From Mytilus californianus (taxonomy: Eukaryota): a DNA stretch of 64,000 bases. The notes below the pieces were generated by a model that was not told the origin of the DNA, did no database searches, and saw only the letters and a list, made by a program, of their open reading frames with translations. The stretch lies in NCBI RefSeq assembly GCF_021869535.1, contig NW_026262581.1:48546001-48610000 (forward strand), read 5' to 3'. The position numbers were made by a program, and so were the translations under genes. Positions 21,712 through 63,777 of the stretch are shown here, piece after piece; the first letter of the stretch is position 1; each line of letters starts with the position of its first letter.

Positions 21712-22095
21712 TATATTTTGATCTCTTTTATATTGTGTTAATGTGAAATTGAACACTTTTTGTCATGCTAAATGTAGTCATAAAAATTTTTAACATATGT
21801 GTGCTAGCACATGAGTTTTTTTCTTAACATTTTCCAGTGTAAATGATAGTATTTTTTTCAACACTGAAGCATATCCTTAGATGTCCACTAAAAACTTTGA
21901 AAGAATCGTTTTCATGTTTTATTGTGGTGATTGGTAGCTGTCTTATTGACGTCTATAATATGTGTGTTTGATTTTCGTTTTTTAAATATATCTAAAAGGG
22001 ATGAAAAATACAACATATATTAAAAATTGGAAACGGTATTCAACATTTAATTTTATTAAAAATAATACTGTGTGTGTCAAATGTGGATTTCGGTG

Positions 22096-23452
22096 TTATC
22101 CTCGTGTGTATCCATTAGATGGCCTTCTTCGACAAATCATGTGACAATTAACAGTTGCACAGTATTTGTTGCTTGGACAATCTCTATCAGCAAGACAGTC
22201 TTTTTTACAACTAATTTTCCCATTTAATACTGACTGGGAAACGACTCCTGAACCAGAAGTACGTACTGATCCACCACGTCTTAAAGAAACTGTGTCTAAT
22301 ACATCAAGTCCACTTCTTCTAAGGTTGGTTGCGTCAAGCATATCAGACCCTGTATGACCAGACATTGCACGGCTTCTACCTTTAGTTTCCAAATGAGCAT
22401 TGCTAGATAGGTCCAAATTTCTAGCCAGACCTGATGAACCAATTATGCTGCCAGAGGATAAATGACCATCATTACTTGAAACTCTGGTTAAACCAGATGA
22501 TAAACTTCTAATTATTTCCCTCCTTATAGAGTCCGACAATCCAGATGCACCAATTATACTTCCAGAAGAAATTTCAACGCAGTAGCTGCTACATCCATTA
22601 TGAATACATTTATGTCCTGATCGACACAATTTATCTCCTCCACACCCATAATGACAGTTACTGATACTGTCATCGTCAGATAAAGCACGTGACATACCAA
22701 CTGAGGAGCCTCTAATGATTTCAGATACAGATGTCCTGCCTCCAACAGAACCCCCAGACAATCTCGTACTGCCGGATAACCCACGTATTATAAATTCGTT
22801 TCCTATTCCATGAGATGTTCCAACTGCTCTTGATCCTGCTCGTCTATTTGCATCAATATGATCTAGTACTGAAAGAGATCCGCTACCACGACGCCCGTTT
22901 ATAGCTCTTCCAGATGTGTTTTCGACCTGTAAAATCTTCTTCACTCCATGAATGTCTAATGCATGCTTTTCTGTTGGTGCGTAGGCTGTAAGATTAAATA
23001 TATAATAATCTTTACAATCTTCACAATACAAGTAATACAAAAAAAAAATATAGGTGAACTACTATCTTTATATCTGCCAATAAGACAACTAATGGATGAT
23101 ATAAACAATTGCAGTGACCTTACGGTTTCAGTCGTAAGCAAAGTGCATACCACATATTAAGCTATAAATGAACCCACATAACAAAATGGGAAACAAATCA
23201 AAATTCAAGAGCATTCTTTTCAAACTTTTACATTGTAATTCACAAAAAATATGTAGACGTTGGTAATAATATTTTTTATGTACTTTAGTTATATATTTTT
23301 TTTTTACTTTTCTGCAGTAAGGTATTTATCTCAACATCGAAAACACTTTCGTTAAAACAGCCTATAAATCTAGAAAAAAGCAACATTTTCTTACCGGCTA
23401 CTATCATTGTGGTCACTGCCATCGATAAGAATGTGGTCTGGAATCTCATCAT
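22096..23452 (-). CDS. G3: same family (~315 aa)
   Basis: Coding exon 2 is 23452-23395 (MMRFQTTFLSMAVTTMIVA, GTAAG). Exon 3 is 22985-22096 with a TAA stop. The ancestral TGA has become GGA, adding one Gly. AATAAA at 22052-22057. Confidence 0.88.
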
Positions 23453-40577: not shown

Positions 40578-41589
40578 ATGTATGTTTTAGTGTGGCCTCA
40601 CACACTTTTGATTTTTTTCAATGTACATATATGACACAGATGTACAGCACAAATGCAATAATGGATATTCTGAAATTTCCATAAAAAACGTTTTCGGATG
40701 AGGTAAGGTAGTTATCAAATATGGAACATCAAAGAAGGCTTCCAAAACCCTCTTAGCTGTCTATAAGATATAAAAAAAAAATGAAGATGTGGCATGATTG
40801 CCAATGAGACAACTCACCATCAGAGACGTAATGATGTGAAAGTTGACAACTATAGGTCAGCAAACGACCTTCAACAATGATTAATACCTATACCGCATAG
40901 TAAGCTATGAATACTTCATATATTTTTAGATATTAAGGACCGACCATATAAATGTTCATATATAAATTTACAAACAATCATAATATTTTCTGAGGTAAAC
41001 TATTTTTGCTATTAAAATATATCCTTAAACTTCTTTCCATGACATTATTCTGGTTTCATGTATACCTATTTTAATAAACAAAGATTTTTTGGATAATGTC
41101 ATTCACTGATTCTGTTTTCTTATAGTAAATCTTTGGTTGTCCGATTTGCCTAACTTGCAGCACGTATCCAGATTTAAAAAGTTCCAAAATATAAATACTT
41201 TTAGTAGTTATTTTAGAATGCAAATAAATGTAGAACATTCCAAGGCATTGTGTTTGCTTTGGCGAATATAGTTTATAGATTTTGCTCTACAATTTTTCTA
41301 ATTGTTTATGGTATGTATGTTTTTGTGTTAAGAGTAAATGTGTAAATGGTATTAATTGAAATCACCAAACTCTTTTTCAATTGATATCTTATTTTTCTTA
41401 TCTGTATTAATATCCTTTCGTTGTTTCACTTTTTCTGAGTAGGATTGCTTTCACGCCTAAATAATCAATATTTTGTATTGTAGTATAGAAATTTATACAA
41501 TAACACAAACTGAATGAAACATTTTATTTTATAAAAAAAAAAATAAATAAGTGTTCAACGTCTGGATTTTGGTGATATTCTGTACATGT

Positions 41590-43213
41590 TCATCGTGTGT
41601 ATCCATTAGACGGCCTTCTTCGACAAATCATGTGACAATTAACAGTTGCACAGTATTTGTTCGTTGGACAATCTCCATCACGATGACACTCTTTTTTGCA
41701 ACCAATTGATCCACTTACTACTGACTGAGAAACGACCCCTGAACCAGAAGTACGTACTGATCCACCACGTCTTAATGAAACTGTGTCTAATACATCAAGT
41801 CCACTTCGTCTAAGGTTGGTTGCGTCAAGAATATCAGAACCTGCATGACCAGATATTCCACGACTTCTACCTATTGTTTCCAAATGAGAATTGCTAGATA
41901 GGCCCAAATCCCTGGCCAGACCAGATGAACCAATTCTGCTGCCAGAGGATAAATGACCATCATTACTCGAAACTCTGGTCAAGCCAGATGACAAACTTCT
42001 AATTATTTTCCTTCTTATAGAATCCGACAATCCAGATGCACCAATTATACTTCCAGAAGAAATTTCGACGCAGTAGCTGCTACAACCATTGTGAATACAT
42101 TTATGTCCTGAACGACATAATTTATCTCCTCCACACCCATAATGACAGTTACTGATACTGTCATCGTCAGATAAAGCACGTGAAATACCAGCTGAGGAGC
42201 CTCTAATAATTTCAGTTACAGATGTCCTGCCTCCAATAGAACCCCCAGACAATCCTCTACTAGCTGATGACCCGCGTGATAAAAAGTCATTGCCTATTCC
42301 ATGAGATGTTCCAACTGCTCTTGATCCTGCTCGTCTGTTTGCATCAATTACATCCAGTACAGAAAGAGATCCAACACCACTACGCCCGTTTATGTCTCTC
42401 CCAACTGTGTTTTCGACCTGTAAAATCTTCTTCGCTCCATGTTTGTCTAATGCATGCTTTTCTGTTGGTGAATAGGCTGTAAGAATAAACATAGAATAGT
42501 TTTTACAATATTCACAAATCAAGTAATAAAAAATACAATACAGGTGAATTACTATCTGCATATGAATATCAGGATATATGTAGTTATTGCAAATAAGACA
42601 ACTATTCACCATACACCAAAGGATGGTGTAAACTTGTAAAACCTTCTTCACTCCATTTATATCTAATGCATGCTTTTCAATGGGTACATAGACTGTAAAA
42701 TTAAATATCTCACAATTTATATAATCTTTATCAATCAAGTAATACCATTAACAATACAGGTTAACTAACATTTATATATTTATATAAGGATACTTGGTAT
42801 AATTGTCAAAAAGACAATTATCCACCATAGACCAAAAGGCGAGGTTGTAAACAGTTGCAGGTACCGTTCGGTTTCAGCACTGAGCAAAACCCATACCTTA
42901 TCGTTATCTATTAAAAGACCCCCATGATAAAATTAGAAACAATTCAAAACACAAAACCATTTGTTTCAAATTTGTTTCATTATAATTTACAGAATATGCA
43001 GATGTTGGTAATATGCCTTCATATAATTATGTACGAAAGTTATCTATGTTTAAGAAGATTTCGGCGATAAGAAATTTAGATTTTATCTACACATTGATAA
43101 AACTTTGTTAAACAGCTTATAAATTTTGAAATGGCAAATCAAATATCTTTCTTACCGGCTACTGTCATTGTGGTCAATGCCATCAACAAGAATATGGTCT
43201 GGAACCTCATCAT
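41590..43213 (-). CDS. G5: same family, chimeric copy (~314 aa via the proximal acceptor, ~386 aa via the distal one)
   Basis: Coding exon 2 is 43213-43156 (MMRFQTIFLLMALTTMTVA). Exon 3 starts at 42476 or 42692, both after ttacag and in frame, and runs to TGA 41590-41592. AATAAA at 41523-41528. Confidence 0.85.
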
Positions 43214-49980: not shown

Positions 49981-50059
49981 CTGCAAATGGTATTCAACAT
50001 TTAATTTTATTTAAAGATAATATTGAGTGTGTCAAATGTGGATTTCGATACCATCCTGT

Positions 50060-51240
50060 TCATTGTGTGTATCCATTAGACGGCCTTCTTCTACACATCA
50101 TGTGACAGTTAACAGTTGCACAGTATTTGTTGGTTGGACAATCTCCATCAGCAAAACACTCTTTTTTACAACCAACTTTTCAACTTACTACTGACTGGGA
50201 AACGACCCCTGAACCACACATACATACTGATCCACTACGTCTTATCGAAACTTTGTCTAATACACCAATAGATATAAGAAGATGTGGTATGAGTGCCAAT
50301 GAGACAACTCTCCATCCAAGTCAAAATTTATAAAAGTAAACCATTATAGGTCACAGTACGGTCTTCAACACGGAGCCTTAGCTCACACCGAAAAGTAAGC
50401 TATAAAGGGCCCACAAAAAATTACTAGTGTAAAACCATTCAAACGGGAAAACCAACGGTCTAATCTTTATATAAAAAACGAGAAACGAGAAACACTTATG
50501 AACCACATCAACAAACGACAACTACTGAACATCAGATTCCTGACTTAGGACAGGTGCAAACAGATGCAGCGGGTTTAAACGTTTTAATGGTACCAAACCT
50601 TCACCCTTTTTCTGAAACAATAGTGTAACATCACAACATAGAAAGACACACTATAAAATATCAAATGAAATAGCTTAACTCAATCAAAGGACATATTAAC
50701 ACCATTGAACATACACTGAACAAATAAATTTGACCTATGACACAATGTAAATACAAAATAAATAAACTAAGGGAAGAATAATAAAAGTAACATATTATAT
50801 CGGTAAGAAATGTTTAACAATTAAAGAAAAACAATATGCTCGAACAAAAATATCAGCCATCAAGTCCACTTCTTCTAAGGTAGGTTGCGTCAAGAATATA
50901 AGAACCTACATGACCATACATTCCTCGGCTTCTACCTATAGTTTTCGAATGAGAACTGCTAGATAGGACGAAATTTCTAGCCAGACCAGACGAACCAATT
51001 CTCCTGCAAGAGGATAACTGATCATCATTACTTGAAACTCTGGTGAAACCAGATGATAAACTTCTAATTATTTCCCTTCTTATAGAGTCGGACAATCCAG
51101 ATGCACCAATTATACATGTTATACTTCCAGAAGAAATTTCAACGCAGTAGCTGCTACATCCATTGTGAATACATTTATGTCCTGAACGACACAATTCATG
51201 CTTTTCCGTTCGTACCATTTTACAATCTTTACAAATCAAG
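50060..51240 (-). pseudogene. Gf: broken G3-type exon 3 fragment
   Basis: 3' part 50265-50060, middle part 51198-50859, split by an insertion at 50266-50858. A deletion joins EKH directly to LCRSGHKC. The exon 3 acceptor is lost and no exon 2 or exon 1 follows upstream. Confidence 0.85.
50266..50858 (-). mobile_element. Family C insertion (~590 bp) in Gf exon 3
   Basis: It splits tctaataca|tcaagtcc and is colinear with 31900-32400. Confidence 0.8.
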
Positions 51241-51429
51241 TACTAGTACATTATAATACAAAATATAACACAGGTAAACCACTATCTGCCTTTAAATATC
51301 AGGATATGTAGTTATTGCCAATTAGACAACGATTCACCTTACAAGAAAGGATTGCGTAAACCATTGCAGGGACCTTACGGTTTCAGTTCAAACCAAAGGA
51401 CATACCGCATAGTAAGCTATAAATGCACC

Positions 51430-62153: not shown

Positions 62154-63777
62154 TCATCGTGTGTATCCATTAGACGGCCTTCTTCGACAAATCATGTGAC
62201 AATTAACAGTTGCACAGTATTTGTTCGTTGGACAATCTCCATCACGATGACACTCTTTTTTGCAACCAATTGATCCACTTACTACTGACTGAGAAACGAC
62301 CCCTGAACCAGAAGTACGTACTGATCCACCACGTCTTAATGAAACTGTGTCTAATACATCAAGTCCACTTCGTCTAAGGTTGGTTGCGTCAAGAATATCA
62401 GAACCTGTATGACCAGATATTCCACGACTTCTACCTATTGTTTCCAAATGAGAATTGCTAGATAGGCCCAAATCCCTGGCCAGACCAGATGAACCAATTC
62501 TGCTGCCAGAGGATAAATGACCATCATTACTCGAAACTCTGGTCAAGCCAGATGACACACTTCTAACTATTTCCCTTCTTATAGAATCCGACAATCCAGA
62601 TGCACCAATTATACTTCCAGAAGAAATTTCGACGCAGTAGCTGCTACAACCATTGTGAATACATTTATGTCCTGAACGACATAATTTATCTCCTCCACAC
62701 CCATAATGACAGTTACTGATACTGTCATCGTCAGATAAAGCACGTGAAATACCAGCTGAGGAGCCTCTAATAATTTCAGTTACAGATGTCCTGCCTCCAA
62801 TAGAACCCCCAGACAATCCTCTACTAGCTGATGACCCGCGTGATAAAAAGTCATTGCCTATTCCATGAGATGTTCCAACTGCTCTTGATCCTGCTCGTCT
62901 GTTTGCATCAATTACATCCAGTACAGAAAGAGATCCAACACCACTACGCCCGTTTATGTCTCTCCCAACTGTGTTTTCGACCTGTAAAATCTTCTTCGCT
63001 CCATGTTTGTCTAATGCATGCTTTTCTGTTGGTGAATAGGCTGTAAGAATAAACATAGAATAGTTTTTACAATATTCACAAATCAAGTAATAAAAAATAC
63101 AATACAGGTGAATTACTATCTGCATATGAATATCAGGATATATGTAGTTATTGCAAATAAGACAACTATTCACCATACACCAAAGGATGGTGTAAACTTG
63201 TAAAACCTTCTTCACTCCATTTATATCTAATGCATGCTTTTCAATGGGTACATAGACTGTAAAATTAAATATCTCACAATTTATATAATCTTTATCAATC
63301 AAGTAATACCATTAACAATACAGGTTAACTAACATTTATATATTTATATAAGGATACTTGGTATAATTGTCAAAAAGACAATTATCCACCATAGACAAAA
63401 AGGCGAGGTTGTAAACAGTTGCAGGTACCGTTCGGTTTCAGCACTGAGCAAAACCCATACCTTATCGTTATCTATTAAAAGACCCCCATGATAAAATTAG
63501 AAACAATTCAAAACACAAAACCATTTGTTTCAAATTTGTTTCATTATAATTTACAGAATATGCAGATGTTGGTAATATGCCTTCATATAATTATGTACGA
63601 AAGTTATCTATGTTTAAGAAGATTTCGGCGATAAGAAATTTAGATTTTATCTACACATTGATAAAACTTTGTTAAACAGCTTATAAATTTTGAAATGGCA
63701 AATCAAATATCTTTCTTACCGGCTACTGTCATTGTGGTCAATGCCATCAACAAGAATATGGTCTGGAACCTCATCAT
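62154..63777 (-). CDS. G7: same family, near-identical to G5; exon 1 lies beyond the window
   Basis: Offset exactly 20564 bp from G5. Coding exon 2 is 63777-63720. Exon 3 starts at 63040 or 63256 and runs to TGA 62154-62156. AATAAA at 62087-62092. Confidence 0.85.

What the first reader, a model, noticed from the sequence alone, without database searches (positions are those of the whole stretch)
42476..42692. Chimeric G5/G7: in-frame, stop-free duplication of the exon 3 acceptor region could create a new Cys/Tyr-rich segment
Seen: the G5/G7 upstream region and introns are G2-like, while exon 3 and the 3' flank are G4/G6-like. The junction at ~42633 (TGTAAA microhomology at 42627-32 and 42635-40) leaves two ttacag acceptors exactly 216 nt apart. 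About 150 nt of former intron between them is open in frame in both G5 and G7. The distal acceptor adds 72 aa (VYVPIEKHALDINGVKKVLQVYTILWCMVNSCLIC...CEYCKNYSMFILT) with 6 Cys and 9 Tyr. Inference: recombination-driven exonisation of intron or alternative 3' splicing giving 314- and 386-aa isoforms. An open, frame-preserving junction is unlikely in AT-rich DNA, so it may be the survivor of selection.
Basis: partly seen in the sequence, partly recalled or inferred. Interest (0 to 1): 0.7.

Follow-up and report, generated by a model that had tools for sequence, protein, structure and literature searches.

The report
Hybrid mussel gene with spare acceptor
Two copies of a California-mussel gene for a secreted WAP-type protein are old hybrids of two neighbouring gene lineages; the join left a spare splice acceptor and a 216-base stop-free stretch, which by comparison with 9 sister copies in two species is ordinary intron, not a new protein segment.

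Summary
In G5 and G7 a 216-nt unit (last 156 nt of the intron plus the first 60 nt of exon 3) stands twice in tandem. This gives two ttacag acceptors 216 nt apart and a stop-free, in-frame 72 codons with 6 Cys and 9 Tyr. The hybrid origin is also right. Trees place the 5' half with the L008/G2/G1 lineage and the 3' half with the G3/G4/G6 lineage.

The exonisation and selection reading is not supported.
- The window is Mytilus californianus. The hybrid form has 8 copies there and at least 3 in M. coruscus, so it predates their split.
- L003, all three M. coruscus copies and the nearest non-hybrid paralogs carry an in-frame TAG where G5 has CAG. The join was therefore born closed, and one T>C change opened it in a young subclade.
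- Other copies carry an 8-nt deletion, small frameshifting indels, a 2-kb transposon, a TGA and a 316-nt repeat in the segment. Exon 3 is intact in all 8 californianus copies.
- The segment diverges at the intron rate. Its hypothetical dN/dS is 0.4 to 2.3, against 0.43 to 0.60 for exon 3.
- All five matched RefSeq models use the proximal acceptor.

RNA reads did not cover the junction, so low-level use of the distal acceptor remains untested.

The parts
43156..43213 (-). G5 signal-peptide exon (ATG at 43213; phase-1 GT donor follows at 43155-43154). Of X-type (L008/G2/G1-like) descent.
   Evidence: Its translation equals the first 19 residues of RefSeq XP_052082945.1 (P0066). Tree of the 5' part.
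42693..43155 (-). X-derived intron body ending in the distal acceptor AG (42694-42693). Weak pyrimidine tract (11/20) and further AGs at -18 and -35.
42633..42692 (-). 60-nt relic of the X-type exon 3 start, now intronised ('pseudo-exon'). It ends at the chimeric join 42633|42632.
   Evidence: Alignment to G1/L008-type exon starts. Deleted in L009. Carries a TGA in M. coruscus L031.
42477..42632 (-). 156-nt Y-derived intron tail with its own acceptor (AG 42478-42477). Pyrimidines 15/20, and no other AG in the 60 nt examined upstream. T at 42485 (-9) is a change shared by all hybrid copies of both species.
42556..42558 (-). In-frame codon CAG. It is TAG in hybrid copy L003, in 6 close Y-type paralogs and in all 3 M. 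coruscus hybrid copies. This single T>C change opened the frame.
   Evidence: The CAG-bearing copies form one clade (96/93 support).
41590..42476 (-). G5 exon 3 coding part (294 codons plus stop): Ser/Gly/Arg-rich region, a central Cys module and a C-terminal WAP-type module. Of Y-type descent.
   Evidence: PF00095, 23.2 bits against cut-off 20.8; 0 mismatches to P0066.
63041..63256 (-). The same 216-nt segment in G7 (distal acceptor 63256, proximal exon start 63040).
   Evidence: 99.9% identical over 851 nt.
62154..63040 (-). G7 exon 3 ORF. RefSeq model XP_052085273.1 (P0013) starts it at the proximal acceptor.

Best explanation
G5 and G7 belong to a hybrid gene lineage. It arose before Mytilus californianus and M. 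coruscus split, by an out-of-register, nearly blunt join between two tandem paralogs of a secreted WAP-type protein family. The 5' partner (X-type) gave the promoter side, the signal-peptide exon, the intron and the first 60 nt of exon 3. The 3' partner (Y-type) gave the last 156 nt of its intron, exon 3 and the 3' flank. The join therefore carries two complete acceptor units in tandem. Splicing to the downstream (proximal) acceptor removes the relic of the X-type exon start together with the intron, so the mRNA encodes the ordinary 314-aa protein. The 216 nt are thus an intronised exon piece plus intron, not an exonised intron. They have since drifted neutrally. In one young californianus subclade a single TAG>CAG change happened to leave the segment stop-free, and this has lasted over the few substitutions since. 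Shown here: the duplication, the chimerism, its age, the ancestral stop, the decay in sister copies, the intron-like rate, and the intact, constrained exon 3. Inferred: that the proximal acceptor is the one used. This rests on gene models and comparative evidence, not on reads.
For: Structure. Chimerism: the 5' part groups with L008, G2, G1 and L014 (100/99), and the 3' part sits inside the G3/G4/G6/L013 clade (96-98). Spread: 8 hybrid copies within about 206 kb of californianus chromosome C1 and 3 in the M. coruscus assembly GCA_011752425.2, with the same join. Ancestral stop: TAG in L003, L013, L015, L021, G4, L017, L028 and in coruscus L031, L036 and L037; CAG only in the clade L007, L009, G5/G7, L004-6. 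Decay in the segment: L003 has an 8-nt deletion plus the TAG. L007 has 2-nt and 1-nt deletions plus a 2,030-nt dispersed repeat with about 300-nt inverted ends. L009 has a 60-nt deletion. Coruscus L031 has a TGA plus a 316-nt dispersed repeat. Exon 3 stays open (289-294 aa) in all 8 californianus copies, with dN/dS 0.43-0.60. Rates: segment tail 5-12%, upstream intron 7-11%, exon 3 1.7-7.4%. Hypothetical dN/dS in the segment is 0.44, 1.42 and 2.26. Models: RefSeq proteins for G5, G7, L003, L004 and L007 all join the signal peptide to AYSPTEK, including the copies whose segment is closed. No protein of 201-640 aa among 5.8 billion cluster representatives matches the insert peptide. The proximal acceptor looks stronger: 15/20 against 11/20 pyrimidines, and no competing AG in the 60 nt examined upstream. 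The insert's composition is that of translated AT-rich DNA: F+L+I+M+Y+N+K is 63% against 24% in exon 3, and S+G+R is 4% against 43%.
Against: No read or contig was seen across either junction. RNA run X21 laid 0 reads. The RNA-like contigs of X11 stop at 42411, 65 nt short of the acceptor, miss the signal-peptide exon as well, and come partly from paralogs. RefSeq models are predictions, and I could not see their RNA support. The distal acceptor is an intact copy of a working acceptor, so some use is plausible. Three lineages (G5/G7, L004-6, L009) keep the frame open, one through an in-frame 60-nt deletion. Chance retention is about 0.4 for roughly 16 substitutions, so this neither supports nor excludes weak selection.
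Confidence: 0.8

Rival explanations
1. Alternative 3' splicing in the CAG subclade. In G5, G7, L004-6 and perhaps L009 both acceptors are used, so a minor 386-aa isoform with the hydrophobic Cys/Tyr-rich insert is made beside the 314-aa form. It could be splicing noise or a nascent exon.
For: Both acceptors are intact ttacag sites with their own upstream units. The frame is open and 216 is a multiple of 3. L009's deletion is also in frame. The G5-L004 hypothetical dN/dS is 0.44, from only 9 changes.
Against: There is no transcript or protein evidence. The frame was closed at origin and is closed in 5 of the 11 hybrid copies. dN/dS is 1 or more in two of three comparisons, and divergence is intron-like. 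The distal site has the weaker pyrimidine tract and AGs at -18 and -35. The insert's best 19-residue hydropathy (1.48) and six extra Cys directly after the signal peptide would more likely harm a secreted protein (inference).
Confidence: 0.15
2. A simple in-situ tandem duplication (slippage) within one gene, followed by divergence of the two units, rather than a join between two different paralogs.
For: Head-to-tail arrangement with period 216.
Against: The two units are only 75% alike, and each groups with a different gene lineage with strong support. The whole 5' region, not only the unit, is X-type (about 90% to L008 against 70-76% to Y-type genes).
Confidence: 0.03
3. Assembly artefact: the duplicated acceptor region is a mis-join of two paralogs in the assembly.
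For: The region is a dense array of similar genes, which is hard to assemble.
Against: Contigs from two independent DNA data sets span the join without mismatch. Eight copies in this genome and three in another species' assembly share it.
Confidence: 0.01

Closest known systems
Hybrid genes from unequal exchange between tandem paralogs (haemoglobin Lepore delta-beta, red/green opsin hybrids, glycophorin A/B hybrids; from my own knowledge)
   Same: The 5' part comes from one tandem paralog and the 3' part from another, with a single breakpoint. The hybrid is functional and is passed on.
   Different: Those arise by in-register homologous exchange and leave no duplication. Here the join is 216 nt out of register with about 2 nt of overlap, so it looks like end joining or template switching. 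The hybrid then multiplied to at least 8 copies.
Intronisation of one copy after tandem duplication across a splice site (Lehmann et al. 2010, BMC Evol Biol 10:156, PMC2891723, read)
   Same: A duplicated stretch containing exon sequence and a splice signal is removed with the intron, so the protein is unchanged. The exon-derived copy then decays.
   Different: In that work the duplication creates a new intron position within one gene. Here the duplicate boundary comes from a second paralog and only lengthens an existing intron.
Competing tandem 3' splice sites (NAGNAG acceptors; duplicated-acceptor constructs of Reed and Maniatis 1986; from my own knowledge)
   Same: Two acceptors in series behind one donor. 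The choice depends on site strength and context.
   Different: The spacing here is 216 nt, with separate pyrimidine tracts. Usage was not measured.
WAP 'four-disulfide core' proteins (Pfam PF00095)
   Same: The C-terminal module of exon 3 passes the Pfam cut-off. The protein is secreted and Cys-patterned, and Mytilus relatives are named 'WAP domain-containing protein'.
   Different: The module has six, not eight, cysteines (read from the translations). The rest of the protein is a Ser/Gly/Arg-rich region without Pfam hits.

Membership tests
Chimeric (hybrid) gene between tandem paralogs | The 5' and 3' parts have different nearest relatives | tested here: met
   Maximum-likelihood trees: the 5' part groups with L008/G2/G1/L014 (100/99); the 3' part sits inside the G3/G4/G6/L013/L015 clade (96-98).
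Chimeric (hybrid) gene between tandem paralogs | One discrete breakpoint shared by all members | tested here: met
   The same join is found in 8 californianus and 3 coruscus copies.
Lepore-type in-register homologous exchange (NAHR) | Exchange in register within homologous sequence, with no duplication at the join | tested here: not met
   The join is offset by 216 nt, links exon to intron, and has about 2 nt of overlap.
Exonised intron / functional alternative 3' splice site | Transcripts that use the distal acceptor | tested here: inconclusive
   X21 laid 0 reads. X11 contigs do not reach the acceptor. No protein with the insert was found. All five matched RefSeq models use the proximal site.
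Exonised intron / functional alternative 3' splice site | Reading frame kept among copies and species | tested here: not met
   The frame is closed in L003, L007 and coruscus L031, L036 and L037. The ancestral state is TAG.
Exonised intron / functional alternative 3' splice site | Purifying selection on the new coding part | tested here: not met
   Divergence 5-12%, similar to intron (7-11%) and above exon 3 (1.7-7.4%). dN/dS 0.44, 1.42 and 2.26, against 0.43-0.60 in exon 3.
Intronised duplicate of an exon-intron boundary | The downstream site is used, so the mRNA is unchanged | tested here: inconclusive
   Supported only by gene models and by intact exon 3 in the copies whose segment is broken. 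No junction reads.
Intronised duplicate of an exon-intron boundary | The exon-derived copy decays | tested here: met
   TGA in coruscus L031, a 60-nt deletion in L009, and up to 15% divergence in the 60-nt piece.
WAP four-disulfide core (PF00095) | Profile match above the curated cut-off | tested here: met
   23.2 bits against 20.8, residues 257-285 of exon 3.
WAP four-disulfide core (PF00095) | Eight cysteines forming four disulfides | tested here: not met
   The C-terminal module has six Cys in the translations. Disulfide pairing was not tested.

The most novel reading that the evidence does not exclude
In the young californianus subclade that lost the TAG (G5, G7, L004-6, L009), the spare acceptor is used at a low level. 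An in-frame 72-residue (52 in L009) hydrophobic Cys/Tyr-rich insert is then translated behind the signal peptide. This would be a caught-in-the-act proto-exon, born from a hybrid-gene join and opened by one point change.
Probability: 0.1. Interest if true: 0.5.

Novelty: new member of a known kind. Interest (0 to 1): 0.25.

Why it matters
The case shows how an out-of-register join between tandem paralogs can give a working hybrid gene. The second acceptor lets the spliceosome discard the scar. The hybrid then spread to many copies in two mussel species. As a candidate new coding segment it does not hold up: the open frame is a late, one-substitution accident in a neutrally drifting intron. Practically, the RefSeq 314-aa models stand, and long ORF calls of 382 aa across this region should not be taken as proteins.

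Tried and rejected
Raw-read RNA run X21 gave 0 reads on 3.5 kb, so it is no test. The RNA-like contig run X11 covers only 41535-42470, with nothing on the insert, on the first 65 nt of exon 3 or on the signal-peptide exon.
- X11 source of signal. Its strongest contigs belong to paralogs: one loose end is an exact match to the G3 3' end at 22072-22101. Only two contigs (42209-42316 and 42331-42411, depth about 90) look hybrid-type. I do not count this as evidence against distal use.
- Joints seen in DNA run X2 (42605>42873, 42611>42881, 41542>42881) have 20-21-nt anchors and probably come from paralogs. They were ignored.
- Protein search with the insert was blank. This is weak evidence, because only 90%-cluster representatives of 201-640 aa are seen.
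- Pfam on the insert gave nothing. Rfam on the coruscus locus gave nothing.
- TGTAAA as the microhomology of the join: rejected, since both hexamers are retained.
- Branch points were not called, as there is no validated mollusc model. Only pyrimidine and AG counts are given.
Exons were searched and compared one by one by reference. In one script the split codon was completed only to display the reading frame; it was left as X.

Full report
**What is there.**
The window is AT-rich animal DNA (GC about 0.32). It holds a tandem array, all on the - strand, of genes for a secreted protein. Each gene has a short signal-peptide exon and a phase-1 intron. A long last coding exon follows, encoding a Ser/Gly/Arg-rich region, a central Cys module and a C-terminal WAP-type module (Pfam PF00095 at 23.2 bits against cut-off 20.8).

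In G5 and G7 a 216-nt unit stands twice head to tail (42419-42836, period 216, 75% matches; self-BLAST). The unit is the last 156 nt of the intron plus the first 60 nt of exon 3. The two ttacag acceptors have first exon bases at 42692 and 42476 (63256 and 63040 in G7). From the signal-peptide exon the upstream acceptor reads 72 extra codons in frame without a stop, with 6 Cys and 9 Tyr.

**Which genome.**
Exon 3 of G5, searched by reference, matches Mytilus proteins. The signal-peptide exon and exon 3 of G5 equal, residue for residue, the corresponding parts of RefSeq XP_052082945.1 (LOC127720407, M. californianus, 314 aa). G7 matches XP_052085273.1 (LOC127722421). The assembly size reported by the own-genome search (1.65 Gb, 175 contigs) agrees with the published M. 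californianus reference (PMC9710001). Both RefSeq models join the signal peptide to AYSPTEK, which is the proximal acceptor.

**The hybrid origin holds.**
An own-genome search shows the family fills at least 340 kb of one chromosome. Eight copies carry the duplicated acceptor region:
- G5
- G7
- L003
- L004
- L005
- L006
- L009
- L007 (completed by L016)

In maximum-likelihood trees the 5' part (signal-peptide exon, intron, first 60 nt of exon 3) of these copies groups with L008, then G2, G1 and L014 (100/99 support). The 3' part (intron tail plus exon 3) sits inside the clade of G3, G4, G6, L013, L015, L017 and L021 (96-98). So the two 75%-alike units are not an in-situ duplication that later diverged. 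They are the acceptor regions of two different paralog lineages brought together by one join.

The join is out of register by 216 nt and links exon sequence to intron sequence. In M. coruscus it reads X-type ...TTTTACAGGT followed by Y-type TTACATC..., an overlap of about 2 nt. Both TTTACA hexamers are retained, so they flank the join rather than mediate it. This points to end joining or template switching, not to in-register homologous exchange.

**Age.**
Three loci of the M. coruscus assembly GCA_011752425.2 (L031, L036, L037) carry the same join. L036 and L037 have exactly 216 nt between the acceptors. L031 has in addition a 316-nt dispersed repeat inserted at the join. All hybrid copies of both species also share an A>T change at -9 of the proximal acceptor (42485), which no non-hybrid copy has. 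The hybrid therefore predates the split of the two species.

**Was the open frame selected?**
The data say no.
1. At the codon that is CAG in G5 (42558-42556), TAG is found in hybrid copy L003 and in the six nearest Y-type paralogs (L013, L015, L021, G4, L017, L028). All three coruscus hybrid copies also have TAG, in the same frame and with no indels between it and the acceptor. The CAG copies form one well-supported clade: L007, L009, G5/G7 and L004-6 (96/93). By parsimony the join was born closed, and a single T>C transition opened it later within californianus.
2. Among five independent californianus lineages the segment is broken in two.
   - L003 has an 8-nt deletion plus the TAG.
   - L007 has 2-nt and 1-nt deletions plus a 2,030-nt dispersed repeat with about 300-nt inverted ends.
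   - In coruscus, L031 adds a TGA in the exon relic.
   - By contrast, the four-times-longer exon 3 is open (289-294 aa) in all eight californianus copies. Its dN/dS is 0.43-0.60, including in pairs with L003 and L007.
3. Pairwise divergence of the 156-nt tail (5-12%) matches the upstream intron (7-11%) and the exon 3 dS. It exceeds exon 3 overall (1.7-7.4%). In the hypothetical frame dN/dS is 0.44, 1.42 and 2.26.
4. Retention of the open frame in the CAG clade needs no selection. With about 16 random substitutions the segment stays open in 38% of simulations.
5. The initial near-openness is only mildly unusual. Fifty-one open codons have a chance of 2-6%, and all relatives already have 8-30 open codons upstream of the acceptor in this frame.
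6. The insert's tail is 63% F+L+I+M+Y+N+K and 4% S+G+R, against 24% and 43% in exon 3. That is the composition of translated AT-rich non-coding DNA.

**Which acceptor is used?**
Direct evidence is missing.
- The raw-read RNA run laid no reads.
- The RNA-like contig run covers exon 3 only up to 42411, and it misses both the insert and the signal-peptide exon.
- Its strongest contigs come from paralogs: one loose end matches the G3 3' end exactly.

Indirect evidence favours the proximal site.
- All five RefSeq models matched to hybrid copies (G5, G7, L003, L004, L007) use it, including the two whose segment is closed but whose exon 3 is under constraint.
- No protein with the insert peptide exists among the searched representatives.
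- The proximal site has 15/20 pyrimidines and no other AG in the 60 nt examined upstream. The distal site has 11/20 pyrimidines and AGs at -18 and -35.
- The -9 A>T change shared by all hybrids lengthens the proximal pyrimidine run. Whether that was favoured is speculation.

**Best reading.**
This is an old hybrid gene whose scar is spliced out. The 60 nt of former X-type exon were intronised together with the Y-type intron tail. This is the kind of outcome described for duplications across splice signals (PMC2891723). The 216 nt are a neutrally drifting part of the intron, and the stop-free state in G5/G7 is a late accident. Low-level use of the spare acceptor in the CAG subclade is not excluded (about 0.1-0.15) and would be easy to test by RT-PCR.

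**Independent presence.**
Contigs of a second californianus-labelled DNA data set (X2) and of a run under another organism label (X8) bridge the join and the distal acceptor without mismatch. The only variant listed inside the segment (42499 G>A in X8) is silent in the hypothetical frame. These sequences are too close to the reference to test constraint.

Noticed in passing
window 62321 (G7) and 41757 (G5), - strand; downstream exon near window 61631: RefSeq models for G7 (P0013, 265 aa) and G6 (P0016, 277 aa) leave exon 3 at an internal TCA|GTACGT donor after ...RRGGS and end in a short downstream exon (VYMKPE* for G7). This drops the C-terminal WAP module, so a WAP-less isoform may exist.
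   Followed up: partly
window 22072-22101 (G3 3' end): A 91-nt loose end of a very deep contig in the RNA-like run X11 matches the G3 3' end exactly. G3-type paralogs seem to be the highly expressed members in that sample (depths in the thousands, against about 90 for hybrid-type contigs).
   Followed up: partly
L031:16264-16579 (M. coruscus): A 316-nt element sits exactly at the hybrid join, flanked by AG on both sides. It has more than 1,800 first-look candidates at 96-98% identity across the M. californianus genome, so it is a recently active short mobile element shared by both species. No Rfam family matched.
   Followed up: partly
G000:C1:48629755-48631784 (L016:1721-3220 plus L007): A 2,030-nt dispersed repeat with about 300-nt terminal inverted repeats (a non-autonomous DNA-transposon look; more than 1,700 candidates) is inserted in the intron tail of LOC127720429, whose exon 3 is still intact.
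   Followed up: partly
L008 (G000:C1:48851141-48851737, + strand): The closest non-hybrid relative of the 5' half lies in an inverted block of the cluster. It has a truncated exon 3 that lacks the central Cys module and the WAP module, and it sits on a long branch (0.22). The X-type parent lineage appears to be decaying.
   Followed up: partly
window 42485 and equivalents in all hybrid copies: An A>T change at -9 of the proximal acceptor is shared by all 11 hybrid copies in two species and is absent from all 13 non-hybrid copies examined. It lengthens the pyrimidine run.
   Followed up: partly
window 50057-51361: A fragmented, rearranged copy of the gene (pieces of exon 3 and of the 3'-flank repeats in both orientations) lies between G5 and G6.
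   Followed up: no
L009 (G000:C1:48642890-48643431): This hybrid copy lost 60 nt covering almost exactly the exon relic, and 15 nt in true exon 3. Both deletions are in frame, and the gene is otherwise intact (289-aa exon 3).
   Followed up: partly
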